The notes: generated from the letters alone by a model not told the origin. DNA of 64,000 nt from Epiperipatus broadwayi (GCA_028023455.1 JAQFVV010000005.1:21762001-21826000), one strand, 5' to 3'; positions 7,306 through 40,189 are shown, numbered from the stretch's first letter. Translations and numbers: made by a program.

Positions 7306-7334
7306 TATATACCAAATACCTAAATACTGCAAAG

Positions 7335-8660: not shown

Positions 8661-9010
8661 TCATTACTTCCCAAAATCTTAAAGGTCTTTTATTTAGGAA
8701 CAAAACTTCCTTCCCTTCGCAGATTTTTATCTAAAAAAATCATGAGCAAGAATGAGGAGCTATTGAACTATTTGAATTAAAGCTTCTACGTCTGGTCTAA
8801 TTTGAGCTCAAGCCATAAGTATTATAAATAAAAAAAATTTATTTCAACAATACTGGTAATATACACAGTAAATTGTTTAAGTCTGTAACAATAATATAAA
8901 AACAGGCAAAACTCACTATATATATTGCCACACACAGCAAGCTAGAGTAATCAATGGATGCCAGAAAGCTTGTGCATAAAATCTCATCTAGTGCCTACTC
9001 ATCCAATATT

Positions 9011-9049
9011 CTCAGACTAGTTTCTGGCTTATGGCCTTCGTCAGTGAGG
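9011..9049 (-). ncRNA. Type I hammerhead ribozyme (family A)
   Basis: Minus strand CCTCA-CTGACGA-AGGC-CATAA-GCCA-GAAAC-TA-GTC-TGAGA; one mismatch in stem I, A.A at the base of stem II. Confidence 0.8.
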
Positions 9050-9148
9050 AGCCTCGGATCTGAGAGCACTGCATCTAGATCTTAGGAGCACTGCATCTAG
9101 ATCTTAGGATCCCTAAGATCTAGATGCAGTGCTCTCAGATCCAAGGCT

Positions 9149-9188
9149 CCTCACTGACGAAGGCCATAAGCCAGAAACTAGTCTGAGG
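9149..9188 (+). ncRNA. Type I hammerhead ribozyme (family A)
   Basis: CCTCA-CTGACGA-AGGC-CATAA-GCCA-GAAAC-TA-GTC-TGAGG; predicted cleavage after C9183. Stem I extends through a GGC/TA internal loop into ATCCAA/TTGGAT. Confidence 0.88.
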
Positions 9189-9639
9189 ATATTGGATGAG
9201 TAGGCACTAGATAAGAATTTTATGCACAAGCCTTCTGGCATCCATTGATTACTCTAGCTTGCTGTGTGTGGCAATATATATAGTGAGTTTTGCCTGTTTT
9301 AACAACAGTTATACACAAGCATAAGAGGAGGTGGTCATGTGATGTTTATTGGCTTAAAAACAATAATATAATGAATAATGCAATTTTTCTTTTACATAAA
9401 TATTTTTTGTTTCCTTCTATTATATATATATAAAAAAAGGCAAAATTAAAAAATAAAGTATACGGTAAGATTTGCAAAAATCACAAGACATTACCATATT
9501 TTTTTACTTCGCCATAGTTATGTCAACTGCTGTAAACTTTATTATGACCAATGAAAGAAAAAAATACATTATTAAAGTAGCAAAGTAATAGCTGGAGTTG
9601 TATGATAGAATTCTGTTGTTTTATTAATCGTTATATTTC

Positions 9640-9900
9640 CATTCTATTGCAGTACTCCAGAGATATCTATTGTAAGCTTGAATTATAAAGAAAATTAGAT
9701 GGTAATGCTACTCAAATCCTCAGACTAGTTTCTGATTATTAATAGTCTACAATGAAGAGGACTGATTTTTCACATACTCTCCCAATATGCATTCCAAGTT
9801 AATAATTTAAATTTTAAACAGCCCAGGCCTTTGAACTCAGTGCTACTTGCTTACAAAGCTAAATCACATTTTGGTGGCTGCAGTTATATGCAACATATGC
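9640..9900 (-). repeat. Old diverged relative of family A with a decayed hammerhead (9718-9760)
   Basis: Minus strand keeps GAAACTAGTCTGAGG, but the CUGANGA box reads TTGTAGA. Confidence 0.5.
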
Positions 9901-11109
9901 ATTAGAAGCGGTAATCCACTCTGTTATTCTACTGAAAGACATTAAACTTTTAAAATGCCTAATTTAAAAAATTCTACTAGCAGGATTTTAAATTACTTTA
10001 AATAAAATTTTCTCATTTAAATATTTCAAATCCATTATAATTTCTTAACATAAAAATATATTTTAGAAAAATTTTGAATATAAAAAGATAAAGATTTCTT
10101 TTTAAAAAATATTTATAATAAGCAATTAATAATAGTAAAAAAAAAAAAAAAAACCAATTTCAAATGGCATTTAATTAATCTTGGTTATTAATGTTAAAAA
10201 TTAATGAATATACAATACTTTAATACACAAATTTACTAAAACTCGACCTTTATAAGCTAGTTTAAACCCTATAATTCTGTGTTACTCAAATAGAATGGAA
10301 TCTGTATGTTTTATTGTCTTTATTCTTAGATTCGAAACTTAGGAACTAACAGAATTCAGGGTTTCTTGAATTAACTAATATTTTTTAATATATATCTTCT
10401 CTAATAATGCTAATTCAATATCTGAGTTATTTTCTAATATTTAAAAAAAGAAAAAATATTGAAATTTCAATTGCATGTAGGTAAAATGGTTTACGCTATA
10501 AAGTGCTTATGGCTAATTCACTAACGAAGTCTAAATCATGATCCTATTATCGAATTACCCAATTTGCCTTTGGAAAAAGAATAAATATATTCTTCAACAA
10601 CATACTGATGATAAAAAAAATATCAAGTATTCATATATATAATAGTTATTAACTTCATCAAAATATTGCATTACATATATTTAAAAGTAAAACACGCTTA
10701 CATATATAAAAAAAAAATGCATTAAAGTTAAATTTGTCATAAACCCGTTAGAACTTTATTAAAGAACTTAACAATAATCTACGTTAAAATACTTTTTAAT
10801 AATGCCCTGTATATAACAATTGTTAATATATCATTTAAAAATAAACAAAATACTAAGCTAATATTATTACTTCATCATTTTTAACACTATTACGAAATAG
10901 CGAGAATTTCGCATCCTTTCGCTTACATATATATAATTGTTTATATGCATATATTAATTTAGATCTTTAGGAAGATATACATGCATATAAATGGAGAAAT
11001 TGATGTTTTCCATTTAATATGCATAAATGGAGGAGGCGTTGTCCCCAGACAATGGATTGTTTTAGGACTCCCGTACGTAATTATCGTTTTTTTAAGAAAA
11101 AATACTCAC

Positions 11110-11158
11110 CAGATATTACAAGAGCTTCATTGGGTCCCACAGTGAATATGTTGCCCAT
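11110..11158 (-). CDS. FLOT2: Flotillin-2, first coding exon (49 nt); later exons not seen, presumably left of the window
   Basis: Translates MGNIFTVGPNEALVISG, matching the conserved flotillin-2 N-terminus (MGN.HT.GPNEAL..SG), followed by donor G|GTGAGT at 11109. Confidence 0.88.
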
Positions 11159-11159
11159 A

Positions 11160-12340
11160 ATGATTAAATTTCTTTTTACTTAAGCAAGGAATTTAATATG
11201 GTACATAAGCAATTATGTGCTGGAATACGAGGCCAAGTGCGTACTAATGCTGTCGCTAGATGGCAATAAGATATAAAAACAATATTTTGTTTGTGTTCTC
11301 GAAAGCATGTAACTAAAATATTAAAAAATATATTGCACTAATTGCAATTTTTCTTCTATATTATTAAACGTAAATAAATATTTTATTAAAATATATTAGA
11401 AATATTTTATAAAAATATATGTTGTTATTATTCAGTCTAATCTTTACATAAATTAATAACTTATGGATTCTTTATTTTTGGATATTTACAAATTTATAGT
11501 ACACTTTTTTAAATTTATTAAATTTTAATTACGTTCACTTTCAGCATTTTAATAATTATTCGAAACTAAAATATTAATTGTGAAATGACATATTTATTTT
11601 TTTTATTAGCTTTTTCGATTAGTCTTTTTCGTCATCCTTTGACGTAACTAATGTGAGTTCGACTAATTTATTGGAGGTTGCTGACCGTGGTGGTTTTTAT
11701 TATGTGAGTTTATCTTTACTTTTTACTTTAAATAACTAGCTTATTTTGATTTATGAAGTGCTTTTCAACAGATTTTATATAACGGTCTTGTCGCAAATTT
11801 TCTATCTTATAAATTAATTTTCGGTTGTTACTGCCATTCGCTCTATCCGTTTTTTTTTTTTTTAATTTATGCTTTGGCCAATTCTTTGCAGCTTCATGCA
11901 TGAAATGTTTTTTAATGTATTGCTCATGTTTTGTTTCATTTAGTTTTATATCATTTGATTTTATTCGTAATTGTGCACATGCGATTTAATTTATACCGGC
12001 TTTGCATTGTACCGTAAGTGCTCTGAGTAATCTTATTTATTAAAATAATTTACAATATATATGTGGTACAATCACAATTTATATGTATGAGAGTATTTAT
12101 TGATTGTAAATATTTACATTGTCTTCACCCTTTCCTCTTCATGCTATATGATTTTACTTCCGCTTCAATTGATCTTACGAAATATTATTCCTCATGATTG
12201 TAGTGAGGAGTATGCGTAATTATACAAGTTTCATAATATTTATCAACTAAATCTTTGTTAGACTTACGCATTTAAGTTCGTGGAGTATTTAGATATTACT
12301 TGTCGATATATTAATTATTTTATCTTTACTATAGTTCAGG
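11160..12340. promoter_or_regulatory. Probable divergent promoter zone: flotillin-2 5' UTR leftward, unknown plus-strand gene rightward
   Basis: Locally CpG-richer patches, ACTTCCG (ETS-like) motif near 12156, plus-strand donors at ~11653, ~11704 and CAG|GTAAAA at 12340. Confidence 0.45.
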
Positions 12341-12750
12341 TAAAATTTATTTCAAATATTTGTTTTATTATTTTAAAAGTAAAGAATTTGTGTGGCGAAA
12401 GTGCTAATGGTTTATGCATTATATATATATAGGGTGAAATAGTTATTTAAATTTCCGTTATTTTCTAAAAGTAATGTTGTCGGTATTTAAATTAATTTTA
12501 AAGATTTAATTTGGGGATTTGGAAAATTAGTATAAAAATAATAAAATTAAAAACATTTTTCATTTGTAATTGGCACTGGTGGATTTATTAATACGCTACG
12601 TAAGCAGTGCCTTAAATATTGGGCAACTTTTACCCCGTACAATTTGGTGCATTTTGTTATAGGATTAAAACTAATATAATCATCTTAAAAAAAAGTAATA
12701 TTTATGAAACGAATGGATTAGTCAATCAGAGCATTGATTAAATGTTAATA

Positions 12751-12815
12751 CCCGTGGTAAGTTTATTAGCGCATCCGCTTGGCATGTTTTCATCCCGGGC
12801 TTCGAATCCAGTTGA
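12751..12815 (+). repeat. Degenerate tRNA-like (SINE-head-like) sequence
   Basis: B-box-like CCCGGGCTTCGAATCC and Ala-like loop TTGGCAT; the cloverleaf stems do not pair. Confidence 0.3.
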
Positions 12816-14134
12816 AATTTGGCATTTTGACTTATATCCCTAGCAGGCTTAAGAATTTTATTATATAGTAAATGAATGTTTTATTAATCTTTTAAATTTT
12901 GTCTTCTCCATAACTTTTTCTATAAAGCTTTCTGAAGATGTCATTTCTTTACTAGTATGTTATTTTCAAATTGTTTTATCATTTGTTAATTATATGAAAA
13001 TGAAAGGTACAAAACATTTATACTTTTTTAGTTATAAAATATCTTTTTTTTAAAAAAAAAAAAAAAAAGATCATTATTGTTTTGAGACATGGAGTCTTAA
13101 TTGTGCGATTATTTGTTCATTTGATAAGATGTGACCATATTTTTCCTTTATTCCCTTATCTACACCCAGTGAAATATATATATATATTACAAGATACATG
13201 TATACATTTATCTCTTAATAATGGGGGGGGGGGCTCAAATATCAGTTATAGATAGAATAGTCCTTATAATTTAAATTTTTAGTTGTATTTGCTTTACTTA
13301 TCATTTTGTATATTTATTTTTCAATTCAAATTTATGAATATATTAATGATCAAATATCATTGCTTAGTTATAATATTCTGTTGCCTAATAACTCTTTCAG
13401 GCAGAAAACTAATGTAATTCATGCATGCATTTTTTAAAAAGTGGTGTGTATATTGTATACATATTGTCTGGTACAAAGCAATTTGGAGTAATTCATTATT
13501 AAAATGTAGTCAAGCAATAACACTGAATCATTCTCATTAGTAGTTTGCTATTGCTTATATCGACACTTCACACTATTTGTTATAACAGCCTAATATTTAG
13601 AGTTACATCTTGCACTTTTATCAGAGGGATTTTAACTCAGACTTTCAAGCTCCTTTCAGTCATTCATACAACCGATACACGTGCTCACATACTACTTTTA
13701 ATGTATTCTTTGCCTCATTATTATCTGTCTTAATGAACAAGGGCTTGAAATGCTACAGCAAATTAATCGAATGACAAACATTAGCAATCTACTAATTATA
13801 ATGGACCTTTGTGGTTATAGTGCCTATTGTCTGAATATCCCAATTTGTCTTTGGAAAAAGAATATATCCAATCAAAAAGTTAGAGCATGTTTGACTTGTT
13901 ATTTTAAAAAATTATTATTTCCTCCCCCCTCCCCCTATATTTTTTTTACAGTATAATAGTGATATTTTTATTTAAAAAAAAGGCATTGAGAGTTCATAAG
14001 AAGCTCAAGTACCAGGACCGATACTGTCACCTCCCAAGTCAGATACTATCAAATGCACCAAATCATGCATAGGTATATTTTATATGTGAGCTATGAGATA
14101 TTAGGTAGTCTAAACAACAATGATATCATTTTTT

Positions 14135-16811: not shown

Positions 16812-17357
16812 AAACAAAGAGCTTTGCTAATTGCTCAACAAGCTTTGTGATAAATACTAACCAAGAGAAAGCATTTAAAATATCTCTATCAGAAACTACA
16901 CCCAATCCCCTGACCAATGGTTTCATGCTTTGGCACTCCTCAGAGAGGCACTAGGGTAATTTCAGAAACTAGATCTAAAAATACCAACCCAAAGCCAGCA
17001 TTTATTTAAGAATTAACCATCGAGTAGAAAATCTGAAATTTTCAGACACTTAAATATCTTCAAACCCAGCTATCTAACTCAAATAGCTATATGGGGCTGA
17101 GAGATCTTCAGCCAAACCATATATTAGTAGTCTTAGCAATATAATATCACTTAAGACTTAAAGCAAAGACTATGAATAGTCAATAAAAAATAAGAGTCAT
17201 ATATCACATGATCCCATTTCTTTTTTTAAGCTTGTAAAATGTAAACAAAGAGCTTTGCTAATTGCTTGTTGAGTAATTAACAAAACTCTTGTTTACATTT
17301 TACAAGCTTAAAAAAAAAGGAATGGGGTCATGTGATATATGACTTTTTTTTTTTTTA
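16812..17357 (+). mobile_element. Family B hammerhead retrozyme-like insertion (minus-sense monomer plus short plus-sense arm with tail)
   Basis: Direct repeat AAACAAAGAGCTTTGCTAATTGCT at 16812 and 17243 (431-bp unit), ~65-bp terminal hairpin 17187-17343, TSD TCTTATAATAATT / TCTTATTATAATT. Confidence 0.85.
16907..16948 (-). ncRNA. Type I hammerhead ribozyme (family B)
   Basis: Minus strand CCTCT-CTGAGGA-GTGC-CAAA-GCAT-GAAAC-CATTG-GTC-AGGGG; predicted cleavage between 16912 and 16911. Confidence 0.88.
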
Positions 17358-19800: not shown

Positions 19801-19871
19801 AAAACGGATGTTGCAAATTTGAAAATTCAAGAATGCATTGTGCAAGCGCAACTATGAAGAAATTAGCAGTA

Positions 19872-21436: not shown

Positions 21437-21961
21437 GTGAAACATGTTTTTCACAAAGCTTGTTGAGCAATTGCAAATGCTCATTGTTTATATCTTACAA
21501 GCTTAAGAGAATGGGTCATGTGATCTATGACTCTTATTTTGACTATTTATAGTCTCTGCCTTAAGTCTTATGCCATGATATATCACTAAGACTACTAATA
21601 TATGGTATGACTGAATATCTCTTAACCCCATATAGCTATTTGAGTTGGATAGCTGAGTTTGAAGACATGTGTCTGAAAATTTCAGATTTTCCACTTAATA
21701 GATAACTTTTAGATAAATGCTGGCTTTGGGTTGGTATTTTTAGATCTAGTGTCTGAAGCTATCCTAGCACCTCTCTGAGGAGTGCCAAAGCATGAAACCA
21801 TTGTCAGAGGTTGTTGGGGGAGGGGGTCCTGACAGATATTTTAAATGCTTTCTCTGGCTAAGCATTTATCACAAAGCTTGTTGAGCAATTGGTAAATGCT
21901 CATTGTTTATATCTTACAAGCTTAAGAGAGTTGGGTCATGTGATCTATAACTCTTATTTTG
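21437..21961 (+). mobile_element. Family B hammerhead retrozyme-like insertion (monomer plus ~90-bp terminal redundancy)
   Basis: Direct repeats at 21451-21541 and 21869-21961 (418-bp unit); micro-foldback TTGTGAAA/TTTCACAA at the 5' end. TSD not resolved in the T-rich flanks. Confidence 0.85.
21770..21810 (+). ncRNA. Type I hammerhead ribozyme (family B)
   Basis: CCTCT-CTGAGGA-GTGC-CAAA-GCAT-GAAAC-CATT-GTC-AGAGG; perfect stem I; predicted cleavage after C21805. Confidence 0.9.
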
Positions 21962-22344
21962 CCTATATTTTTTCTTATCTTTGATTTATTTTTTTCTATC
22001 ATAAAACTTGTGATTTTTGATTTTTTGGAAAATGTTGTTTTTCCATCTCTTAGTTATTTTAAAGAATAACTTAATGATTAAAAGTTAATTTAATGAATTG
22101 GAATCAACTGGTTAATTAATATAATTTTTACAAAGTATTTATTTTTTTGATGAAATGAATGTTTAAAATTTCAAACTATCCTGTCAATTTCTTTTATTTA
22201 TTGTTAATTAGTTATTAAATAACTGCTTTAAAATATTTTTTAGTCTTTCCACCTCCTTACTTATAATAGGATAAACCTATGAATTATTTAAAGTGATTTA
22301 GAATAAACTGCTTTATTTATTTATCTTTTTCTTACTGTAATAGT

Positions 22345-23861: not shown

Positions 23862-24027
23862 AAAACAAGGTAAAACTCTCCATACAGTAGTGCCAACGAG
23901 AGTAATCAGTGGATGGCATCCATTGATTACTCTGGTTGGCACAGGGTGGCACTACTGTATGTAGAGTTTTGCCTTGTTTGATAACAATTATGTGCTAGTA
24001 TAAGAGATGGTGATCATGTGATGTTTA
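23862..24027 (+). mobile_element. Family A short foldback insertion lacking the ribozyme
   Basis: ~50-bp inverted arms centred at 23916, ~49-nt tail; low-complexity TSD candidate TGATC(T)8A / TGA(T)9A. Confidence 0.8.
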
Positions 24028-26181
24028 TGATTTTTTTTTATATAAGAGAATTAATTTATAAGCTTGAGTAATCAGTAATATTTATTAAATCAAGGGTTCA
24101 GTGTACATTTATTTACAGATTATTTGTTTTTGAATATCATAATTTAATGAATACATTTTGTGACAAATTTATCAATTACATTAACTTCTAATCAGTTTTG
24201 TAAAATAAAAGGATTTTAAAATGCTATATGTGATTTTTTTTTTTGTTTTAATTCATTGTTATTGTATAGCTTGTAAATAATTATGATAGCTCTAAAATGG
24301 ATTAAAGGCACTATTTTCAATGGTTTGTCTGATTACACAGTATTAGTATTGCTTTTAATTTATTATTATATAAATTGAAGAGGTTTTAAACAGCAATTTT
24401 TCCTCAGAGAAGTTTTGAACCTTTGGCATTGGGTATACCATGTTAGCACATTACTTATAGAATACTGCACTAATCATCTTACAAAATCATTCCACTATTA
24501 GAGAATATAGATGTATAATAATATTTATTACTGTTTAATATTAATTAAAAATAATTATTGTTATTTTCATACATTGTGTATACTTATAACACCATATAAA
24601 TTTTAATTATTTGCAAAAAAGACATCTAAAAAAGATGTGCCATCTCCTTTCTCAACATATGCATGTTATGATGAGACAGCATTCTTCAGTTTTCCCAGGT
24701 TATAACTTGCCACATATCAACATTATCCTTAGTCAATGCTAAAACATCCCTCTTCATTGTGACACTATCCCCACCCTCTCCAGATAAATACTTTTAACAA
24801 TTTGTAGCAGTCATTTATTTAGATGTTTTAATTCATGTTATTAAAGTAGCATATATGAGTAAATTGGAAGTTATAAGATTTAAGTTATTACAATGAAAAA
24901 AATCGCAATGGAATTTAATTTACTCCATGTGGATGTATTTAATAATAGTAAAAATATTAATCTTTAATTAAAGTTTAAAATGTACATCTGAGTTGCAAAT
25001 AATTAATAAAAATTCTTAAGATATTTATCTGGTAAATGGGGTAGTAGTTGTAAGTGCAAGAAGTTTAACATCTAGATTAAATTTTAATAATTTGTTATTG
25101 CTAAACTGAGCAATTATAATGAAGATGTGAAAGTTTTCATACCTGGACCACATGAAGAGGGCTGGTATGAGGTGAAACAGAAAAGGTATAATTTAAACTA
25201 TTACTCATGGAAAACAGTTTGAAATAGAGTTTTCTCATGTTTAATAATAACAGATATATTGTATATTTGGGTTAGAAATGATGTGTTAGTTTCTAGCCTA
25301 ATGAATGGGGGGGGGGGGCTCACAATTGTAATGTGGGACATTTGGCACTATTAAATCATGATAATTTGAGATTATGTATATTGGATTATGTATTATATTT
25401 TAACAGGTCCTGCTCAAATATCAGGTTTTTTGGGCCTCAAATTGAGGTCCTGTGCTCGGAGGAGTTCTAGAAGCATTTTCAAATTTTTAAGAAAATTTGT
25501 GATGCCTCGGAGATATATTGCTGTGGGAAATATTTTTATTGAATTTATGTTGATTCTTTATTTTTTTATTATTGCCTGAAGCTGGTACCAGCAAAGACAA
25601 AAAGCACTGTCGAATATGAAGGGCTATTCATAAAATCTCAGAAAATATAAATAAAAAGGCAAGGGCAATTTTAAACAGATATAACACTATGCATAAGTAT
25701 TTTCTGATACTTAGATTAAATAACCAATAAAACAAATATCAACTTGTTTATTTTTGCATCACTCATAAAATTAGCATTCTGTTTACGAATAATAACTTTT
25801 CGGGAACACTATCAAGCAACTATTATACTTTATACCATCATAATTTAGCAGTGCTCAAGCAATATATTGTACGTGTGTAATTGCAAAGCAATGCATGCAG
25901 CACTGTTGTGCTCTTATGACAGTATAAAATCAACCTCATACTAAAACTTGCATATTACAAAAATTGTGTTTTAAAAAAAAAAATTGAATGAGCAAAGCAA
26001 GTTAATATTGATGATGTAATAGAAGGCAATACAAAAAATTACAGGAAATAATTAAAACTATAATTTTTTAATTACAGAGGCCAAACTCTCCATTCAGTAG
26101 TGCCACCAGTGTAAGCTAGAGTAATCAATGGATGCAAGGTTTTTGCATAAAATCCCTATCTAGTGCCTACTCATCCAATAT

Positions 26182-26222
26182 CCCCAGACTAGTGTCTAGC
26201 TTGTCACTTTAATCAATGAGGA
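26182..26222 (-). ncRNA. Inactivated hammerhead (family A)
   Basis: Core boxes mutated to TTGATTA and GACA; stems partly retained. Confidence 0.55.
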
Positions 26223-26686
26223 GCCTTTCTGAGAGCACTGCAGCTAGTTCTTAGGATCTAATGCAACCCTCCAGCAGCCACCTTTTACTTTATTAGGTAA
26301 CTATAAAGCTTTAACACCAAAATGAAAGACGCAATAATGTTTTTGATTCATGCTCTTTAGTTTGTATAGTTGCATATATCTGAAGTCAGTTCAGCATCCA
26401 TACTTTTTGGTATCTTTGGTTCTTTAATAACCACAATCACCATAATCCTATTGAGCAGGATTGGTTTTAATTAAACCACTAAACATAATATGATCACCAT
26501 TTCTTATATTTACACAAGCTGTTTACACAGAGGCTAAACTCTTCATATGATAGCGCCACCAGTGCAAGCCAGAGTAATCAATGGAAGCAAGGTTTTCATT
26601 TTGCATTCAAAGCTTTAAAGTTAGCTAATAAGGTAAAAGGTGGCTGCTGGAGTGTTGCATTAGATCCTAAGATATAGGTGCAGTGC

Positions 26687-26726
26687 TCTCACTGATGACA
26701 GCCACGAGAGAGAAACTAGTCTGGAG
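26687..26726 (+). ncRNA. Damaged hammerhead (family A)
   Basis: CTGATGA and GAAACTAGTC are intact, but stem II (CAGCCACGAGAGA) does not pair and the upstream stem I extension is deleted. Confidence 0.55.
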
Positions 26727-27068
26727 ATACCTTCTTGCACTGATGGCGCTACTGTATGGAGAATTTAGCTTCTGTGTAAACAACCTGTGTAAGCATAAGA
26801 AATGGTGATCATGTTATGTTTAGTGATTTAAAACCAATCCTGCTCAATAGGATTGTGGTGAATATGGTTATTAAAGAACCAAAGACACCAAAAAGTATGG
26901 GTGCTGAACTGAGTTCAGATCTATACAAGCTAATGAACTTGAATTGAAAACATCACTGTTTTCATTTTGCACTCAGAGCTTTATGGTTAGCTTATAAGGT
27001 AAAAGATGGTCGCTGGAAGTTTGCATTAGATCCTAAGATCTAGGTGCAGTACTCTCAGATCCAAGGCC

Positions 27069-27108
27069 CCTCTCTGATGAAAGCCACATGCTGGAAATTA
27101 GTCTGGGG
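27069..27108 (+). ncRNA. Type I hammerhead ribozyme (family A), partly degenerate
   Basis: CCTCT-CTGATGA-AAGC-CACAT-GCTG-GAAAT-TA-GTC-TGGGG; core intact, with mismatches at the bases of stems I and II. Confidence 0.7.
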
Positions 27109-27289
27109 ATATTGGATGAGTAGGCACTAGATAGAGATTTTATACAAAAACCTTCTTGCATCTATTGATTACTCTAGCTTACGCTGGTGACACTACTATA
27201 TAGAGAGCTTAGCCTCTGTGTAAATAGCTTGTGTAAGCATAAGAAATGGTAATCATTTAATTTTTTAATTTTATGTTGTTTTTAGTATA

Positions 27290-29990
27290 TGATTATTTTC
27301 AAATCATTATTAATCCACTTCAGCTTTTTGATCCATAGCTTTTATTGTCCACATCATACTAACAAATTTTCTTATTTTATCAATACATCTCACATACAGT
27401 CTCTACATTTATTACAATCTCTTGGAATCCAGATTAAGACTTCAATGGTCTATCTACTATCATCTCTTCTTGCAATATGTCTAACCCAGCTCCATTTCAG
27501 TTTCTAATTCTTTCAATGTTAGTAATGATACCTGTGTTTTCTTATCCAAGTATATTACTTTTGATCCCTTTTTGTCATTTCTAACATATGTTCTGAAGTT
27601 TCTATATTGCTTTTCTGTTAAGTGTCCAAATTTCAGATCCATAAGTAAGAACTAGTAAAACACATTATTAAAAATCTTTCTTTTCAAGAAGTTAGGCATA
27701 TTTCCTTTTAATACTAAGTTGTTTCTACCAAAAGCATTCCATCAAAATTCTGTGATTAACTTAATCCATTAATTCATCTGTATTAATAATCTGACCAAGG
27801 TAATTATAATTAATTATTTTTTATTTATAATTATTAATCTTTAATTATCTTCTGAGAAAATAATCTTTTTAGCATTTGTATTTAGTTCTACTTTCTAACT
27901 TTCATCTGAAAACTATTGCAACATTTCCTGAAACTCTGAAGCATTATTTGCAAAAACAACCACATTTGCAAAATGTAAATCTCCATGGGTTTTTTTCATT
28001 AGCTTACTATTTTTATCTACAAAATGTTTCATGTTAAACTGCTATAAAATGTTTCAGAGATATACTCTATCATACAACCTTATCAATATTAAACTTTTTA
28101 ATGTCTCTATGTAATTTAATCAATGCTGTTACATTTTGTTAAAATATTCTTCAGAATTTGACAATATCCTAGGTCTTTATTTTGATAGTTCAAAGTGTTA
28201 ATTACTGTGGAAATGTTTATAGAGTCAAATACCTTTTCATAAATACAAATTCAAAGAATGATGACAACTCATTCATCAATCCTTTCTATAACTTTCCTCA
28301 GTACTTGTATACGATCTATGCTGAAACTACTTTTAAATCTAACTTGTTCTTTTGACCGGTGTGAATCAAAAATTCCTTATAGATGAATTATAATTCTTTG
28401 TTAAAAATTGTATATAACATTGATAGAAGACTACTACATTTTCCAATCATCTGGTGTATCTTCATCATTTAGCCATTTGGTATATAGTTTCGCCAACAAT
28501 TTTTGGTGCTTATGTGTTTTCAAGTAAACCAAGATGGCAGTTGTATTTTTGATAAAGCTATAGTCCCCCACCTCCAAATGGTAACAAAAAAAATTCCTGC
28601 TAGAAAACGTATTTAATTATTACATTTTGTTTTTTATTACTGTTATTTTAAAAAAAGAAATCATTGTGGAAAAATTAATTACAGTATTTATGGTTTATTT
28701 TATTTTTTTCTGCATTAGCTTATGAACAGAAAAATGAAAAATAATTATAATATTTACATTTTATTTATGTTGATGGCATGCAATCATATCTTGATCATTA
28801 ACACATTTCTGGAAGGTGGAATCCTGTATCTTTGGAAATACTCTTCAGCATCACATTTTGTGACAGGAAGGTCCCAAATTTTTATCATCATGGTAATTTA
28901 CCAAAGAAACATGTTAAATTACGAGAATGTTAAGAGTGTCTCGGCGCTTCCCACGTTAAAACAAAAATTGAAATATAGCTTCTTAATGAAATTTATTGGT
29001 GTTTATTCCTTTTTAAATTTAACAATTGATTTATTAATTTTGTTTTAATTTAATAACTAACACATCTTTGGTAGATTATAGGCCCTCAAGACTACATTTA
29101 TCAAAAGTACAGGGAGACATACTGGTTTATTTGAACTCACAAGTACTCAGTTTATTATTTCTTCACCTCTTTTCAGATATCAATTATAATTCTATCATTT
29201 TCTAGAGAATTCCCCTTCTTAATAGATCTAATTGTATGTTTCATTATTTAAAATACTTGGTAATTCAATAGAAGTAGTAATTATAACAATTATTTTGGTT
29301 TTTTTATTATTTAGTTAACTCCTTATGGAATTTTTCCACACAATTTATAGGTCATCTTTTCTTTTTAATACTGAAACAGCTTTTCTTCTAATGTCAAGAT
29401 GTGTTATGTTTTTGAGATTTATTCTATTCTATAAATTTATTTTCTAGTTCAATTATATTTTTTTCATTTCAGTGTTGTCTCTCTTTTATATTCCAGATAT
29501 TCAATTCTTTTTAATGCTTCATTTTTAAATATTTTCATATTCCTTCTTTTCTTCATGTATTGTCTTGTGTCAATTGAAAATTTGTAGATAAATTGCTGCT
29601 TTTTATTTCAGCTAACTTTGTTGAGTTCTTAATAGATTATCATTTATCTTCTTATTGATCTCACTTAAGTTTTGAATATCATCAAAGTCTGTCTATATTT
29701 TAAAATGATTAGCAAATTCTTATTTCAGTTTATCTGAGTATTTCTGAAAATTAGGAATATCAACTGACAATTGTCTTTTTTAATAATTTTTTGTTTCTCT
29801 AGTTTTGCATTAACAGGATATCTTACTTACATCTTACTAATCCATGATCACTTTCTGTGTTCAATCTATCAAGAACATTATAACAGTTTTTCTGCAAATT
29901 TCACGAGTCTTATGTCCTCTCATTTCTGTCACCATAATCAAATTTTTACCAGCACCTCTTTCATTTTTCACTTAATTTCAAATTATATCC
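27290..29990 (-). mobile_element. Decayed RTE-clade LINE (endonuclease remnant at 29400-29990, RT and 3' end at 27290-28500), split by a TIR element
   Basis: Reverse complement is homologous to the 7335-8660 LINE; APE-like F.YGDRNER..LVKFAE and SDHGLVRC motifs near 29830-29960. Confidence 0.75.
28505..29147. mobile_element. Non-autonomous TIR element (family T), copy 1
   Basis: Homologous to 37609-38227; degenerate GGT(G/A)CTT termini; weak 8-bp TSD CAATTTTT / CAGTTTAT. Confidence 0.7.
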
Positions 29991-33330: not shown

Positions 33331-33868
33331 TGCGCTTTCCACTTCCCTGACTCACTGGCAGTGCATTGTATAGTGTATTCTGGTTTCTGACATACTTATA
33401 AACACATACGTGATTAGAAATGTAGGAAGGGACATATTTATTACAAAACAGAACGCATCATAGTGAAGAAAATCAATTTTTGTTCATTTCTCATCCAAAA
33501 ATAAAATTTTCATAATAATTATTGAATAATTTTAATAAAATACAAGCTAATATCATTTATGCATGCCACCTGTAACTTGACCATAGATGCACTAGATGAT
33601 TGTGTGAATTTGTCAATAATTGCTTCTGTCTCCAATTTGTCTAACACTTCCTTTTCAGTGGATATAGCTACATATATGATTGCAATTTTTCTTCAGACAA
33701 TGAATTTCTTAGCTTTATTTTTATGCTTTTTAGCCTTAAAAATGTTTTCTCACATTGGTCTTCAGCAACTGATAGTATGCAGATAGTTTTATAAAGTTCA
33801 TAAAGATTATCATATGCCTTATGAAGTCTATTGGGTGCCAGAATTTTTAGTTTATATGATAGACAAAT

Positions 33869-34352
33869 CAAAACTCTCCATACAGTATTCCCACCCTGTG
33901 CCAACCAGAATAATCAATGAATGCCAGAAGGCTTGTGCATAAAATCCCTATCTAATGCCTACTCATCCAATATCCCCAGACTAGTTTCTGGCTTGTGCCA
34001 TCGTCAGTGAGGAGCTTTGGATCTGAGAGCACTGCACCTAGATCTTAGGATCTAATGCAACCCTCCAGCACCCACCTTTTACCTCTACTTAACTACAAAA
34101 CTATGAGAATGAAATTGAAAACACAAAAATATTTTCAACCTAAGCTCAATAGCTTATATAGTCATATGGGTCTGAACTCAGTTCAGCACCCATACATTTT
34201 GGTGTCTTTGGCTTTTTAACAACCATAGCCACCACTATCCTATTAGGCAGGATTGGTATTAAACCATTAAGTATCACATGATCACTATCTCTTATACTAG
34301 CACATAATTGTTTATAAACAATTATGTGCTAGTATAAGAGATAGTGATCATG
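33869..34352 (+). mobile_element. Family A retrozyme insertion: one full minus-sense monomer plus a 40-nt plus-sense tail
   Basis: 12-bp TSD TGATAGACAAAT at 33857 and 34353; perfect 42-bp-arm hairpin 34272-34357. Removing the insert restores the host transposase frame SKIYSICLSYKLKILAP. Confidence 0.92.
33974..34012 (-). ncRNA. Type I hammerhead ribozyme (family A), best-formed copy
   Basis: Minus strand CCTCA-CTGACGA-TGGC-ACAA-GCCA-GAAAC-TA-GTC-TGGGG; all core bases present, 4-bp stem II; predicted cleavage between 33979 and 33978. Confidence 0.92.
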
Positions 34353-36143
34353 TGATAGACAAATGCTGTAAATTTTAGACTTGTTGCAACTGGAGTGTAT
34401 ATTCTTACCATCATTAAGCAATAGCTTTAATAAATCAAAGTTTGAAACAAAAGAAAACAATTCCAATATTACTTGATCTTTGCTGGTTTGTGAAAACAGC
34501 TTAATAATATTAATATCTTCCAAGGCTTCATCTTCAAGACCCTTCTCTGCAAGTTTTAAACTTTGCTGGATTCAAGCAGGATAAATCTTTATATAATTTT
34601 TTGTGTTGTACAATTGGACAACGTATTCCATTATTAGATTAAACACATTTATTCAAAAATCAGCTGAAGAATCTGTGGAATTTCTTTCATTTACTATTCT
34701 TTTTTTGCTTCCTCTATCTTTTAACTGGCAATGTTGTTTCCAAAGGGTCAATTTCTAATGTTTGATTTTCATTCGTCTTTAATTGCCTTACTGTGAACAT
34801 TATCAAATGTTCTTGTTTGTTCTTTGTTGTAACTGAATCTGCTAAACTTTATGTAGTAAAAATATCTAAATCATCTCTCTGTAAATAATTTGATAACAGG
34901 GCTTCAATTTCAAATATATACAAGTAACTAAATACTGTGAATATTGTTTCAAACTTTAGAAGAATTTGAAGGAAAACATTTGCTTCTCATTTTCTTTTTG
35001 CATTAAACTTCTCTGAATCTTGCATGTCAATAGCTTTACAAAAGTATTGACAGTAGCATCAAAACATTCAAATATAGTTGTTGTCCTGCATTATATTTTT
35101 CTGACTATTTCATCTTACCATTTAGCTTTAATCGTTTAATTTTTTCTTATTCTAGATGTTTTCCAACAACTTCTTTCTATATAACCATTCTCTTTTATGA
35201 TGTTTCAACAAAAGTTACTAAATTCTGGAGTAACTTGCAAAAAGAAATTGCAGATGCACAACATTTTGTTGTTTCAATTAATACCAAATTCAAAACATGG
35301 GCATAGCATCATATATGAATATGATAATCTGCCATATCAGTAATTTTACTTTGTAAATCATTAGACTGGCCATGATAATTTTTAGATCCATCTGTACTAT
35401 TACATAAATATTGTTTTAGGATCAATTTTAAGATGCTGTAATGTTTTAATCATTATAGCAAAAACTCCCTATTTTGTACTATTGTTACTTGGCACTGTTG
35501 AAAATAGTTGCTCGCAGAGAACATATTGAATAATAATCCTAGGCTGATCACTGAATGAAGCATCTTGTGTTAAATCAACTTCAATAGAATAATGTTTTAC
35601 TTGAGAAACTTTATGACTAGGTTGTTTTTTTTTTATTTTAATATATTAATAGTTATTTTACTCAGGTACATAAGAAGTTCGCCATAGCCTGGGATCATAT
35701 TTGCCATCAACTGTACTATAGTTAAAAAAATTGTCATACTTCAGAATCTCATTATTCATAATATAGGCTGATTTCATTTCTATAACTGCAAAAAAAGTGT
35801 TTGCTTGTCTGACATCTTTATAATGCCTATAATTCCCATGACAGGATTCCTCTGCTTTAATACTTGTTTCTTTTTAATTATTGAAGATTGCAAAAGAATT
35901 ATCTGAGGTTCTATCATTAACCACACTGATAAATTGCTGAACATTGTTGTTGATTTGTGTAACGCCAAACTCTGACCAATACTATTCCAATCACTAAAAC
36001 CATATACACAGAGTAATGGGTTACAAATATTGGGAAACTCAAAGGCCAAACAGTATGAATAATATAAGCACTTATTTTATTTGTTATATGTTAGCCATTT
36101 TCTTGGGACTAAGTCATTCATAATTTTCCTCATCATTCAAACT

Positions 36144-36727
36144 TAGAGTGATCAGACTGGTTCGATCAAAAATCGGGACATAACGACCAATCATTTTTAC
36201 GTCATTGCGTCCTTTTTTTATAAAACTCCATTCCTTTGTATATTCATTGTTGTAAGTATACTTTCTCTTTGGCATATTGTCTATTGTTTAGGGTTATTAA
36301 TATTCATATTAATTTTTATCACAATGGAAAATATTAACAAAGAACTAGTAAAACTACACTGTCAATCAAAGCAGGTGCAAGCGCAGTTCAAATTTTAGCC
36401 TACAAAAATCCAGTTGCACATGCTTCAAGGCGAGGTTGGACATGAGAACGCATCTAGTTTGAGAACCCTGCCATATAACATAATAGCGATCTTTATTTTG
36501 TGTTAATTTGTCAGAAGTTTTTATAGTATTATTGTAGAGACTGAAATGGGTAGAGAGAGCCAAGAAACTACCATTTTTGTAATGATTTGTTTATGTAAGA
36601 CAAATAATAATTATTAGTATTTGAAAATTGGCATATACAACGGTCTCAAATAGATATTTCGGAGACACTCGGACATTATTCAAAAATAGCGACAAATCCC
36701 GAAAAATCAGGATGTCTTGTCACCCTA
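36144..36727. mobile_element. hAT (Tip100-like) MITE
   Basis: TIRs TAGAGTGATCAGAC / GTCTTGTCACCCTA; 8-bp TSD TTCAAACT / TTCAAACC. Confidence 0.8.
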
Positions 36728-37608
36728 TTCAAACCAGCATTAAACAACAGATTATAAAGTATTAGAAGTGGATATTCAATAAAAAAACTGTTTTAGATTT
36801 GCTCATGATGGAAATTGGAAGATTCCTATAGCTGATTTTTTATTTTTTTATGTACATTTATTTATAGGATGTGCATTAGAAATCCAAGTCATTTATGCCT
36901 GAAGGTATATATGTTTCCCTGTAACTTAGTTGAGACTATGTTCAGATGTTGCAACTATAGATAGTACAGGTATTAGAACAATAAAGCCAGAAAAAGTACT
37001 GGATCTGGCTTAGTAAATAAAGAATGTTATTATATTTATCTCTACATTGAAAGTAACTCTTTCCTGTTTTTTCAACTTACAAGTCATTGCATCATCACTA
37101 TGAGTTGTTTCTCAATTCTTGATTGTTTATTGTGGAAAGTAGTTGTGGTATTGTAAAATCTGTAATAAACCTACGTCGGTTGACTGATTTTGCCTTTTTC
37201 TCTGTGCATTTCAGTAATCCAGGTGTATGCCTTTTTTCCCCCATGCTGATAGGAATAATATTCCTGAAATTTAAACTTAATTAAAAATACTCCCATGTTG
37301 GAAAAATAAACATCTACAATTAAATGTTGAATCCAGCCTTTGCCATAAGTTGACTACTTATATATTTGCATTCAATAATAGAAATTATTATTGTTGTTGT
37401 TATAGTGCATTCTGCATTTTGTTTGTAAATTGTTGTAGTGTATTGTAACAAATTTCTCTAATACAGTAGCGAGGTCTAGAAATACATAATGAATTTCAAC
37501 ATAGTAATGGAAATATGTTTTTAAACTCTAGAGTAAATAGAAGGAATTATTTATTGAACCTGCATTGTGCATATGTATTATTATTTGAGACTGAAGCCTA
37601 AATATATT

Positions 37609-38227
37609 GGTACTTGTGAGTTTTTCATTAAACCAAGATGGCAGCCCATATTTTTGGTACCAGCTAAGAAAAGTTTTATTTAATATTTAGACTTTATTAT
37701 TTATTACTATTATTTTAAAAAATAAATCATTGTGGAAAAATCAGTTACAATCTTTACAGTTTATTTTTTTTGGATTAACTTATTAACATAAAAATGAAAA
37801 AATATATATATAAATACAATATTTACATTTTATTTATGTTGGTGGTGTGCGGTCATATCATGACCATTAATGCACACTTTTTGGGAGGGCATGATCCTGT
37901 ACCTTTGGAAATAGTTCACTGCATCATGTTCTCTGACAGGAAGGTTCCAAATTTTTATCATTATGACAATTCACCAAAAAAACTGCTGACAAAAAGAAAC
38001 GCTGAATTGAACCAAAGTATGACAATGTTAAAGCATCTCATCGCTTCTCATAGTATAAGTAAAAAAAAAAAATTTGAAATAGTTTCTTAATGAAATTTAT
38101 CAGAACTTATTTCTTTTTTTTAATTTAACAATTGATTTATTAATTTTGTTTTAATTTAACAATTAACATATCTTTGGTAGATTTATCAAAAATATGAGCT
38201 GCCATTTTGGTTCTCACAATAAGTACC
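37609..38227. mobile_element. Non-autonomous TIR element (family T), copy 2
   Basis: ~45-bp imperfect TIRs starting GGTACTT and containing AACCAAGATGGCAGC; 8-bp TSD AATATATT / AATAAATT. Confidence 0.8.
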
Positions 38228-38827
38228 AATAAATTTAACTACCTAGTATTTTTAAAATAATTTTATATAATGAAAGAAAACACATTACATTTAAATTAAA
38301 GGTGGTGAGGGTTACAGAATATAAAAAGTATTAATTGAATACTTACTTTTAAAAACACAGAAAGCATGATATGAAGAACTGTTGAATCACATTCAAACTA
38401 ATGCCAATGTAGTGAAAAATATTTGCTTTTATAATATATGCAACAACTCGATATAAAAGTTGACTTATGAACCCATGCTGGGAATTGCCATTGGATAACC
38501 TATGTGTATTCTTTTTCATCTATTATTTGAAATATATTTTATTTTTCTCTCATTTTTTTTATTTTTTTATAAGGATATCTTTTTTTAAAATCTTTATTGT
38601 GTATTTTCTGTTTTATCATGTTATTTATTTGTTTTGTTTATTTTTCTTATATTTTTAACTAATGCTTATAAAAGTTATATTTGGATTTAGCTGTATAAAA
38701 TTATCAGTGATATTGTATCGACGTTTCAATTGGATCCCATCTACCATCATTTGCATAAAAAAATATTATTTTAAAATATTTAGAGGCATAACAACAACAC
38801 ATGGAACAAGACTAAAAATTCATCAAA

Positions 38828-39054
38828 TAGTTGTTTTGTTTGTTTTTGTTTTTTTTTTTTTGATATGGCAAAATGTAGTAACAGTAGATGAGTAGTCCGA
38901 TAACTTAACAGTCATTTTGAGTAAGGGAATTTAAGAATTTTTTTCCATAGTTGTTTTGTTTTTTTTTTTGATATGGCAGAAGCTAGTAACAGTAGATGAG
39001 TAGTCCGATAACTTAACGGTCATTTTGAGTAAGGGAATTTAAGAATTTTTTCCA
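38828..39054. repeat. Tandem duplication, 2 x ~110-120 bp
   Basis: TAGTTGTTTTG...GATATGGCA...GTAGTCCGATAACTTAAC...GAATTTTTTCCA occurs twice. Confidence 0.9.
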
Positions 39055-39891
39055 AATGGGATGCAATTTAGATTTATCATCATGTTTGTAGATACGGTCT
39101 GATCTCGTAAGAAACTTAATCGTCTCCAATTTTATTTTATTTTTGTAGTGGTGCTATATCTTGATAGGATTCTTGTGTTAGAAAATCCATAATATGAAAT
39201 GAGGTTACTTCTTTATTATATTAACATATTCGTCCTTATTAGCATTGTTATTGTCATAATGATTACTCATATTAACATAAGAAGGATCCACAAATTTCAT
39301 GTGTGTTTTCATAAATTTTGAGGATCTCAAGAAGGATAGAATCCTTAAATTTGGACTAATTTTTGATTAGTAGTTTACGTAACTTTTATGTTAAGCATTT
39401 CATATTAAATCTAATATTGTTTATAGTTTCTTTTATATATGGAACACAAGTTCTAATGAGTTGGGTTTTTTTTTTGCCTTCATTTTTTTATTATCATTGT
39501 ATATATTTATGTATATATTAGGCAGCAGCAACATAGGATGATCTTGATGACAATTGATTATATCATGTTATTAACAATACATTATTTCAGTTATGCAAGT
39601 TTGAAAACTTATTAATTTTGCAATTATGTAGAATGTTTTCATATGATCATAAAGATTTGTTGTTTAATTATCAGTGCCTAATAATAGTATTATCAATCTG
39701 TTTAGAACTGTCATTCTCTGCCGCCATTTTTTGTTAGTCAATCAACTGCTCTTATCATGAGTAAATAAATGTTCTTTTTTCTATCACATCCAGATTTTGT
39801 CAAACCAATACTGCATGTATCATTTTATCGCTTTGTTCTTTATAATGAAAATAAAAGATGTAGGGGCAATATCAAAACAAAAAAATAATAG

Positions 39892-40132
39892 ATATAATTT
39901 GTCCAAACTTCAAACACTTTTTAGCAAAACTCTTTATTTGTACACACACAGACACCTACGTTTCGACTGACCTGCAGTCTTCTTCAGAGCAAGACTGCAG
40001 GTCAGTCGAAACGTAGGTGTCTGTGTGTGTACAAATAAAGAGTTTTGCTAAAAAGTGTCTGAAGTTTGGACAAATTATATTTATAGGATATTACGGCAAA
40101 CATAAAGAAAAGTGTGATTTTGGTAATATTTA
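39892..40132 (+). mobile_element. Palindromic Penelope pseudo-LTR-like insertion (family P)
   Basis: ~90-bp arms (39892-39982 / 39991-40080, one mismatch), 52-nt tail, 13-bp TSD AAAAAAATAATAG at 39879 and 40133. Confidence 0.88.
39953..39990 (-). ncRNA. Minimal type I hammerhead of the Penelope-associated kind
   Basis: Minus strand GCT-CTGAAGA-A-GACTG-CAGGT-CAGTC-GAAAC-GTA-GGTG; loopless palindromic stem III (ACGT), 5-bp stem II, stem I truncated by the foldback junction. Confidence 0.75.
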
Positions 40133-40189
40133 AAAAAAATAATAGTTTCTGGTGAAAATAAGGATAATATAAGTTTGTAATTAGGTCAG

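What the first reader, a model, noticed from the sequence alone, without database searches (positions are those of the whole stretch)
8899..40145. Three unrelated repeat families each carry a type I hammerhead ribozyme: a local retrozyme community
Seen: family A (unit ~453 bp; cores at 9011-, 9149+, 27069+, 33974-, damaged at 26182- and 26687+), family B (unit 418-431 bp; cores at 16907-, 21770+) and family P (39953-) all show stem I-CUGANGA-stem II-GAAA-stem III-GUH-stem I. Stems are kept across copies while loop II varies (ACAA, CATAA, CACAT). Units have no ORF and occur as monomers with terminal redundancy or as tandem multimers. Established: non-LTR retrozymes in animals are short tandem non-coding repeats with type I hammerheads that yield circular RNAs and are thought to depend on Penelope-like elements. 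Inference: these are retrozyme-type elements, possibly undescribed families, giving ~420-455 nt linear or circular RNAs.
Basis: partly seen in the sequence, partly recalled or inferred. Interest (0 to 1): 0.92.

Follow-up and report, generated by a model that had tools for sequence, protein, structure and literature searches.

The report
Hammerhead retrozymes moved by Penelope machinery
This stretch of a large animal genome holds dead copies of short, non-coding jumping elements that carry self-cutting "hammerhead" RNA motifs and were pasted in by Penelope-type retrotransposon machinery. This class is already described, so these are new families of a known kind.

Summary
The motifs and repeats are real. 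Family A (457-nt unit) and family B (~419-430 nt) are non-coding repeats with thousands of copies in a 5.6-Gb genome.

- **Family B:** it carries a type I hammerhead. A consensus-like copy passes Rfam's cut-off (35.1 vs 34 bits); the two window copies score 26 and 19.7.
- **Family A:** Rfam misses it because the 10.1-11.1 pair is U-A or A·A instead of G-C. A covariance model built only from sibling families finds every A site (up to 40.8 bits, E about 5e-10).
- **Covariation:** six stem pairs show compensatory changes across families A, B, D and E.
- **Not unrelated:** A and B are homologous over the whole unit.
- **Family P:** it is not a retrozyme. It is a head-to-head pair of 5'-truncated 3' ends carrying a Penelope-type minimal hammerhead motif.

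All three families show the Penelope insertion signature: 5' truncation, partial tandems, inverted arms, a ~50-nt tail on one side only (24 of 24 A pairs, 9 of 9 clear B pairs), and 12-13-bp target duplications.

Self-cleavage, expression and circular RNA remain untested, because no RNA run was available. The verdict is new members of a known kind (non-LTR retrozymes). The scan had already noted such families elsewhere in this genome.

The parts
8887..8899 (.). Left copy of the 13-bp target-site duplication (AACAATAATATAA) around the family A palindrome
   Evidence: Exact repeat also at 9359-9371.
8906..9087 (-). Family A arm (unit positions ~273-456), left half of a head-to-head pair. Hammerhead at 9009-9050(-), with one helix I mismatch.
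   Evidence: BLAST to the A unit. Sibling-family model scores 34.2 bits, E 5.7e-8.
9112..9358 (+). Family A arm plus its one-sided tail (unit ~274-457, then 1-~65). Hammerhead at 9148-9189(+), C17 at 9183, with A·A at 10.1/11.1.
   Evidence: 40.8 bits, E 5.1e-10. Tail match.
9717..9758 (-).
   Evidence: Model R1 scores 17.8 bits, E 0.0066. The core is mutated.
16829..17256 (-). Family B unit (83% identical to the other window copy). Hammerhead at 16906-16949(-), C17 at 16912.
   Evidence: Rfam Hammerhead_1 scores 19.7 bits.
17289..17352 (+). Short inverted tail arm of the same B insertion (unit ~15-71)
21447..21966 (+). Family B insertion of 1.24 units (unit 391 to 419, 1 to 419, 1 to 72). Hammerhead at 21769-21811(+), C17 at 21805.
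   Evidence: Rfam Hammerhead_1 scores 26.0 bits against a cut-off of 34.
23914..24028 (+). Strongly 5'-truncated family A 3' end with tail, no hammerhead
26080..26525 (-). Old family A unit (~78% identical to the young copy) with a broken hammerhead at 26181-26222(-)
   Evidence: 15.2 bits.
26527..27213 (+). Old family A partial unit plus full unit. Hammerheads at 26686-26726 (helix II lost) and 27068-27109 (mismatches at 1.1/2.1 and 10.1/11.1).
   Evidence: 20.2 and 23.9 bits.
33857..33868 (.). Left copy of the 12-bp target-site duplication (TGATAGACAAAT) of the young family A insertion
   Evidence: Exact repeat at 34353-34364.
33869..34321 (-). Young family A monomer (95-97% identical to other genomic copies). 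Hammerhead at 33973-34013(-), C3 at 34007, C17 at 33979, with U10.1-A11.1.
   Evidence: 38.7 bits, E 2.4e-9.
34322..34352 (+). Inverted tail arm of the same insertion. It meets the monomer head-to-head at a 14-nt palindrome and ends in microhomology with the target.
39879..39891 (.). Left copy of the 13-bp target-site duplication (AAAAAAATAATAG) of the family P insertion
   Evidence: Exact repeat at 40133-40145.
39892..40132 (.). Family P: a head-to-head pair of ~100-nt 3' ends (palindrome 39888-40084) plus a 47-nt tail on one side only (about 40086-40132)
39953..39991 (-). Penelope-type minimal hammerhead motif in P. It has a CUGAAGA core, one unpaired A, a 5-bp helix II closed by G10.1-C11.1, GAAA, the palindromic pair C15.2-G16.2, U16.1 and A17 (at 39957). 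Helix I has 4 pairs, three of them G·U.
   Evidence: Minimal descriptor gives 1 hit against 0 in 300 Markov resamples. Rfam and model R1 do not find it.

Best explanation
Families A and B are homologous, high-copy, non-coding, non-autonomous retroelements of the animal 'non-LTR retrozyme' class. Each unit carries a type I hammerhead with a 6-bp helix I, a 4-bp helix II and a very short palindromic helix III. That form cuts best when two tandem copies pair.

**Likely life cycle**
1. Tandem copies are transcribed.
2. The hammerheads cut the transcript into unit-length RNAs.
3. A host RNA ligase closes these into circles.
4. The reverse transcriptase-endonuclease of a Penelope-like element copies the RNA at a staggered chromosomal break.

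Copying starts in one of two fixed zones about 50 nt apart and often runs for more than one turn. This gives the terminal redundancy. When both DNA ends prime, it gives two inverted arms.

**Shown here:** the repeats, the motif and its covariation, the Penelope-type insertion architecture, the 12-13-bp target duplications, and abundant Penelope endonuclease genes in the genome.

**Inferred:** self-cleavage, circularisation, and which Penelope-like element supplies the enzymes.

Family P is a separate case. It is a pair of 5'-truncated 3' ends of a Penelope-type element with a minimal hammerhead motif.
For: - **Motif beyond chance:**
- **Rfam:** Hammerhead_1 is passed by a consensus-like B copy (35.1 bits, cut-off 34). 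It is also passed by sibling families D and E elsewhere in the genome (35.4-40.2 bits).
- **Independent model:** a model built from B, D and E alone finds all A sites far above noise.
- **Covariation over 11 sequences:** 92.4% of cells are paired against 75.8% in shuffles. Six pairs change on both sides. The score is 0.494 against 0.209 +/- 0.037, reached by 0 of 500 shuffles. Slid controls pair only 30-44%.
- **Homology:** A and B align over the whole unit.
- **Cross-species helix II change:** contigs of four coded organisms carry A-U in place of G-C at 10.2-11.2.
- **Insertion architecture:** variable 5' ends and arrays of 1.1-3 units. All 24 family A head-to-head pairs, and 9 of 9 clear family B pairs, have one arm ending at unit position ~5-9 and the other ~50 nt further on. 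This matches the published Penelope structure of partial tandems, an inverted 5'-truncated copy and a one-sided tail (PMC8557442).
- **Target duplications:** 12, 13 and 13 bp.
- **Penelope genes:** at least 10,242 GIY-YIG candidates; all 150 scored pass the cut-off; open frames reach ~900 aa.
- **Circular folds:** z = -7.7 (A) and -3.6 (B).
- **Intact cores in sampled copies:** 54 of 78 (A) and 30 of 56 (B), with CpG decay in the rest.
Against: - **No RNA evidence:** no listed run is on record as RNA, and contigs cannot show ends or circles.
- **Rfam:** it does not report family A at all, and no window copy reaches the cut-off.
- **Family A core:** it lacks the conserved G10.1-C11.1 pair. It has U-A in the young subfamily and A·A in most others.
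- **Insertion ends:** they do not lie at the predicted cleavage site, and 5' ends do not pile up there. The insertions therefore carry no footprint of cleavage.
- **Partner not found:** no autonomous Penelope-like element with a matching 3' module was found.
- **Published activity:** dimer-type and minimal hammerheads cut poorly in vitro (PMC4209133).
Confidence: 0.78

Rival explanations
1. The elements are Penelope-derived short repeats (pLTR-derived SINE- or satellite-like) in which the hammerhead is a passenger or an inactive relic. They spread from linear multimeric transcripts, or by unequal crossing-over, and no circular RNA stage exists.
For: - Insertion ends ignore the cleavage site.
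- Insertions contain uncut hammerhead sites.
- Family A lacks G10.1-C11.1 and is invisible to Rfam.
- Hammerhead-free Penelope clades proliferate well (PMC8557442).
- Published minimal or dimer-type motifs cut weakly.
- No RNA data are available.
Against: - The core is intact in the consensus of every subfamily and family compared, although the units are only ~55-60% alike, and the stem changes are compensatory.
- Helix III is palindromic in A, B and D, as in active dimer-type hammerheads.
- Tandem loci with two or three same-strand hammerheads exist.
Confidence: 0.17
2. The palindromic copies (8900-9358 and family P) are DNA-level foldback or MITE-type transposons moved by a transposase, and the hammerhead-like strings are incidental.
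For: - Long, near-perfect inverted arms.
- Short size, high copy number and target duplications.
Against: - The same sequences also occur as direct partial tandems and as solitary 5'-truncated copies.
- The central junction differs from copy to copy while the outer ends are fixed.
- One side always carries an extra ~50-nt tail. A transposase acting on terminal inverted repeats would not produce that.
Confidence: 0.03
3. The motifs are chance matches in AT-rich repeats.
For: Three other core-only matches in the window (28283, 33746, 56934) look like chance.
Against: - Shuffle controls give 0.06 and 0.0 expected hits.
- Covariation is present.
- Sibling copies pass Rfam.
Confidence: 0.01

Closest known systems
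Metazoan non-LTR retrozymes (Cervera & de la Pena 2020, PMC7229834; Li, Clavereau & Pollet 2026 preprint, 10.64898/2026.07.22.740005)
   Same: - Short non-coding repeats of low G+C with a type I hammerhead.
- Tandem arrays.
- Target duplications longer than 4 bp.
- Predicted self-paired circles.
- Co-occurrence with Penelope-like elements.
   Different: - The units (419-457 nt) lie at or just above the published 150-450-nt range.
- Most copies here are dispersed insertions of 1.1-1.4 units or inverted pairs rather than long arrays.
- Family A has U-A or A·A at 10.1/11.1.
- Expression and circles are not shown here.
Penelope-like elements and their pLTR minimal hammerheads (Cervera & de la Pena 2014, PMC4209133; Craig et al. 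2021, PMC8557442)
   Same: - Insertion architecture: 5' truncation, partial tandems, an inverted 5'-truncated copy and a one-sided tail.
- P's motif has the unpaired base after A9, G10.1-C11.1 and the palindromic 15.2-16.2 pair.
   Different: - A, B and P encode no protein.
- The tails are ~47-75 nt rather than the published 30-40 bp.
- P's helix II is 5 bp (6-8 bp published).
- No link to a coding parent was established.
Hammerhead satellite DNAs: newt satellite 2, Schistosoma Sm-alpha, Dolichopoda pDo500 (PMC6155905, PMC2837043)
   Same: - Type I hammerhead with a short palindromic helix III that works as a dimer in tandem transcripts.
- Compensatory changes in stems, including at 10.1/11.1 in pDo500.
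   Different: - No sequence similarity was tested.
- The present families are mostly dispersed and carry clear retrotransposition marks (target duplications, truncations).
Plant LTR retrozymes (PMC4918200)
   Same: Non-autonomous, hammerhead-bearing, and proposed to use a circular RNA intermediate.
   Different: The plant elements have type III hammerheads inside LTRs, PBS/PPT motifs, 4-bp target duplications and Gypsy-type helpers. No LTRs are seen here; PBS and PPT were not scanned for.

Membership tests
Rfam Hammerhead_1 (RF00163) | Score at or above the gathering cut-off of 34 bits | tested here: not met
   - Window copies: B scores 26.0 and 19.7 bits; A is not reported even on 499 bases.
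- Met only outside the window: a consensus-like B copy at 35.1 bits and families D and E at 35.4-40.2 bits.
Hammerhead ribozyme, type I (structure) | Conserved core (CUGANGA, GAAA, UH) framed by helices I-III with covariation, helix I open | tested here: met
   - Descriptor hits 4 against 0.06 expected.
- Six pairs show double changes; 92.4% of cells paired; 0 of 500 shuffles reach the score.
- The sibling-family model finds A at 34-41 bits.
Hammerhead ribozyme, type I (structure) | Conserved G10.1-C11.1 pair | tested here: not met
   Applies to family A only: U-A in the young subfamily, A·A or A·G in the others. The pair is present in B, D, E and P.
Hammerhead ribozyme | Self-cleavage 3' of position 17 | not testable with these tools
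   Needs in vitro transcription. Insertion ends give no footprint of cleavage.
Animal non-LTR retrozyme | Non-coding tandem repeat of ~150-450 bp with G+C below 50% and without LTRs | tested here: met
   - Units of 457 and 419-430 nt with G+C 0.38 and 0.37.
- Longest stop-free stretch 86 aa.
- Arrays of up to 3 units for A, and a ~3-kb array of roughly 7 units for sibling E.
- A is marginally over 450 nt.
- PBS and PPT were not scanned for.
Animal non-LTR retrozyme | Target-site duplications longer than 4 bp when present | tested here: met
   12 bp at the young A copy and 13 bp at the A palindrome.
Animal non-LTR retrozyme | Expressed as unit-length linear and circular RNA | not testable with these tools
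   No run on record as RNA. The runs are contigs of unknown library type.
Animal non-LTR retrozyme | Predicted stable, highly self-paired circle | tested here: met
   Circular minimum free energy is -142.7 (z -7.7) for A and -114.5 (z -3.6) for B against mononucleotide shuffles; 70% of bases are paired.
Animal non-LTR retrozyme | Co-occurrence with Penelope-like elements | tested here: met
   - At least 10,242 GIY-YIG candidates; 150 of 150 scored exceed the cut-off; open frames reach ~900 aa.
- Reverse transcriptase and endonuclease fragments occur in L036 and L042.
Penelope-type insertion | 5' truncation, partial tandems, adjacent inverted 5'-truncated copy, extension (tail) at one end only | tested here: met
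   - A: 24 of 24 pairs have one short and one long end. B: 9 of 9 clear pairs. P: a 47-nt one-sided extension.
- The tails are longer than the published 30-40 bp.
Penelope pLTR minimal hammerhead (for P) | Core, unpaired base between A9 and 10.1, G10.1-C11.1, palindromic 15.2-16.2, helix I of 4-5 bp, long helix II | tested here: inconclusive
   - All features are present except that helix II is 5 bp and three of the four helix I pairs are G·U.
- 1 hit against 0 in 300 resamples, but the descriptor was written after seeing P.
- No covariation data.
Penelope pLTR minimal hammerhead (for P) | Lies in the terminal repeat of an element with an RT-GIY-YIG gene | not tested

The most novel reading that the evidence does not exclude
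The insertion architecture may directly record how Penelope enzymes copy a retrozyme. In every head-to-head pair, one DNA end primed at unit position ~5-9 and the other ~50 nt downstream. The template was longer than one unit and still held an uncut or religated hammerhead site. This would fit two-ended target priming at fixed internal sites of a circular RNA. It would also imply that family A's hammerhead, which lacks G10.1-C11.1, is a working natural variant.
Probability: 0.3. Interest if true: 0.6.

Novelty: new member of a known kind. Interest (0 to 1): 0.36.

Why it matters
Animal retrozymes are proposed to be non-autonomous partners of Penelope-like elements. The papers read here argue this from co-occurrence and sequence relatedness.

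Here the insertion sites carry the Penelope signature at base resolution: fixed 3' zones, a one-sided tail in every pair, and 12-13-bp duplications. This is a modest independent line of support. It also gives concrete constructs for testing the still unknown integration mechanism.

Family A offers a natural test of how far the 10.1-11.1 pair of the hammerhead can vary. Otherwise the finding is ordinary for this genome, where the scan has already noted similar families.

Tried and rejected
- **Rfam on the window:** no hit on the whole window at gathering scores, and no hammerhead hit on 33 kb at E up to 10. Hits appeared only on short pieces.
- **Local folding:** folding energies of the hammerhead segments are not unusual (z from +0.7 to -2.4).
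- **5' ends at the cleavage site:** junctions scatter over unit positions 328-381, and only one lies at 346. There is no footprint of cleavage.
- **Arm-to-arm identity:** 95.1% within pairs against 93.9% between loci. This cannot tell whether both arms came from one template.
- **Search for the autonomous partner:** The Penelope endonuclease fragment 590 nt from a B copy in L042 shares no 3' sequence with A or B.
- **tRNA-like head:** ARAGORN found none. A- and B-box-like strings in the A unit were seen by eye only.
- **P against A and B:** no significant similarity (z about 0).
- **My first verdict on P:** I first judged P a chance match. I withdrew this after reading the published minimal hammerhead layout.
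- **Sequencing runs:** all are contigs of uncertain library type, so they show presence in several related organisms but not expression. The stretch laid was 1201 bases.
- **ORFs of 110 aa or more in the window:** no Pfam family.


Full report
**Setting**

The window is G000:C5:21762001-21826000 of a 5.6-Gb assembly and has about 28% G+C. The window holds few long open frames. A decayed LINE reverse transcriptase lies at 7161-8780.

**Are the repeats real?**

Yes.
- The young family A copy (33880-34360, minus strand) has at least 3529 first-look candidates in the genome, and the best are 95-97% identical.
- The family B copy (21470-21900) has at least 5307 candidates at about 90-92% identity.
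- Family P (39860-40160) has at least 1515.
- Tandem copies give a unit of 457 nt for A and 419-430 nt for B.
- Neither unit has a stop-free stretch longer than 86 aa, even when read as a trimer.

**Are the hammerheads real?**

Rfam gives no match on the whole window at gathering scores, and no hammerhead among matches up to E = 10 on 33 kb. On short pieces the picture changes.
- A consensus-like B copy from another contig scores 35.1 bits against Hammerhead_1 (cut-off 34). The two window B copies score 26.0 and 19.7.
- The genome also holds other Hammerhead_1 matches above the cut-off. These define sibling families that I call D and E.
- Family A is not reported by Rfam at all.

Three independent checks support family A.
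1. A strict descriptor finds four sites in the window (two A, two B) against 0.06 in 200 dinucleotide shuffles. The bare core pattern occurs 11 times against 1.5 expected.
2. A and B are homologous along the whole unit: global score 170 against 56.6 +/- 10.9 for shuffles. D shares the same conserved blocks. Comparing their hammerheads is therefore a fair covariation test. On 11 sequences, 92.4% of cells pair (shuffles 75.8%, slid controls 30-44%). Six of twelve pairs change on both sides, and the covariation score is 0.494 against 0.209 +/- 0.037 (0 of 500 shuffles).
3. A covariance model built only from B, D and E finds every family A site in an unfiltered scan of the window. Scores are 40.8, 38.7, 34.2, 23.9, 20.2 and 15.2 bits, while noise is about 12 bits.

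Part of that score reflects plain homology, since D and A share the same helix I. The result shows that A's motif is the same structure, not that it cuts.

**What kind of hammerhead is it?**

- **Layout:** in the consensus, A reads helix I (6 bp), CUGACGA, helix II UGGC/GCCA with loop CACAA, GAAA, then ACUAGU and C17. B has helix II GUGC/GCAC and ACCAUGGU.
- **Helix III:** it is 2-3 bp and palindromic in A, B and D. This is the published mark of metazoan type I motifs that act as dimers in tandem transcripts (PMC4209133).
- **Helix I in A:** it continues beyond a small internal loop into a further 6-bp stem.
- **The deviation in A:** the 10.1-11.1 pair is U-A in the young subfamily. It is A·A in the 9149 type, A·G at 27069, and A·A in most contigs of four related coded organisms (34000 A>T in about 90-96% of depth). 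Those contigs also carry the compensatory helix II version AAGC/GCUA.
- **Significance:** the literature lists G10.1-C11.1 as highly conserved, although compensatory changes at this pair occur in the cave-cricket satellite. Activity of family A is therefore open.
- **Copy decay:** genomic copies decay as expected for dead insertions. In the samples, 54 of 78 A copies and 30 of 56 B copies keep the core, and CpG sites within the motif are a frequent site of decay, at C7-G8 in A and C11.1-G12 in B.

**Family P**

P copies are ~245-bp palindromes. Their centre differs from copy to copy while the outer ends are constant, and one side carries an extra 47 nt. P is thus a head-to-head pair of short 3' ends, not a unit that can form tandem arrays.

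I first rejected its motif, because it fails my first descriptor, Rfam and model R1. After reading the published description of Penelope minimal hammerheads, I found that P fits it. It has one unpaired base after A9, G10.1-C11.1, no loop 3, and a palindromic 15.2-16.2 pair. A descriptor with these features hits once in the window and never in 300 resamples. Three caveats apply:
- the descriptor was written after seeing P;
- helix I has only four pairs, three of them G·U;
- I have no covariation data.

The 5' ends of P arms cluster within about 20 nt of the core, and I cannot explain this.

**How were the copies inserted?**

I mapped 50-odd family A arrays onto unit coordinates.
- The 5' ends are variable and the lengths run from about 1.1 to 3 units.
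- The 3' ends fall into just two classes. One lies at unit position ~5-9, inside a 14-nt palindrome. The other lies at ~48-66.
- Most loci are head-to-head inverted pairs. In all 24 pairs, one arm has the short end and the other the long end.
- Family B behaves the same way, with ends at ~418 and at ~66-90, and 9 of 9 clear pairs are mixed. P has its one-sided 47-nt extension.

This is the structure described for Penelope-like elements: strong 5' truncation, partial tandems, an adjacent inverted 5'-truncated copy, and a tail at only one end (PMC8557442).

Three window insertions have clean target duplications:
- 12 bp around 33869-34352;
- 13 bp around 8900-9358;
- 13 bp around 39892-40132.

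The genome has at least 10,242 GIY-YIG candidates. All 150 scored exceed the cut-off, and some lie in open frames of ~900 aa. The enzymes are therefore plausibly available.

**What does this say about the template?**

The tail is simply the next ~50 nt of the unit, and insertions longer than one unit contain an intact hammerhead site. The template was therefore longer than one unit. It was either a circle copied for more than one turn or an uncleaved multimer.

The ends do not coincide with the predicted cleavage site, and the 5' ends do not pile up there. The insertions are compatible with the published circular-RNA model (PMC7229834) but do not prove it. The units do fold as unusually stable circles.

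No window locus has two intact same-strand hammerheads, so these copies are end products. Tandem loci with two or three motifs exist elsewhere.

**RNA evidence**

There is none. The run search found 14 runs from five studies and nine coded organisms that hold part of the A unit. None is on record as RNA, and all are kept as contigs. Laying four of them shows thousands of short contigs confined to the element, and the variants described above. This shows that the family is shared by related organisms, not that it is expressed.

**Comparison with what is known, and verdict**

A and B meet every sequence-level feature of animal non-LTR retrozymes that I could test. The 2026 preprint already argues that such elements are non-autonomous derivatives of Penelope-like elements. 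The scan's earlier notes describe similar 454-475-nt families and Penelope hammerheads on other pieces of this genome.

The finding is therefore a set of new members of a known kind. It has two points of modest interest: the base-level Penelope insertion signature, and a hammerhead lineage without the G10.1-C11.1 pair.

Noticed in passing
window 7161-8780 (+): Decayed LINE-type reverse transcriptase in several broken frames (RVT_1 31.2 bits for 7864-8130). An inverted copy of its 3' part lies at 27412-27749. Both lie next to old family A copies, which suggests an old inverted duplication.
   Followed up: partly
window 33668-33904 (-) and 34329-34523 (-): The young family A copy sits inside a dead frame with a weak hAT C-terminal dimerisation match (15.1 bits, below the cut-off of 21.4).
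   Followed up: partly
family A unit, about positions 81-91 and 143-153 (window copy roughly 34231-34241 and 34169-34179, minus strand): Strings resembling Pol III A and B boxes about 50 nt apart. A T-run lies at the unit boundary, where the short class of 3' ends falls. ARAGORN finds no tRNA. Seen by eye only.
   Followed up: partly
L072 (G000:C809:202331-205374): Sibling family E forms a ~3-kb array of ~419-430-nt units in two inverted halves. Its hammerhead passes Rfam (40.2 bits) and has a 5-bp helix II.
   Followed up: partly
window 39892-40132 and loci L077-L095: The 5' ends of P arms cluster within about 20 nt of the 5' edge of the hammerhead core, upstream of the predicted cleavage site. 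No explanation found.
   Followed up: no
window 33910-34073 in runs X1, X2, X8, X11: Summed contig depth is about tenfold higher over the ~160 nt around the hammerhead than over the rest of the unit. More subfamilies may share this module, but contig depth is a poor measure.
   Followed up: no
window 38831-39046 and 3463-3761: Two-copy tandem repeats of 108 and 151 nt, unrelated to the finding.
   Followed up: no
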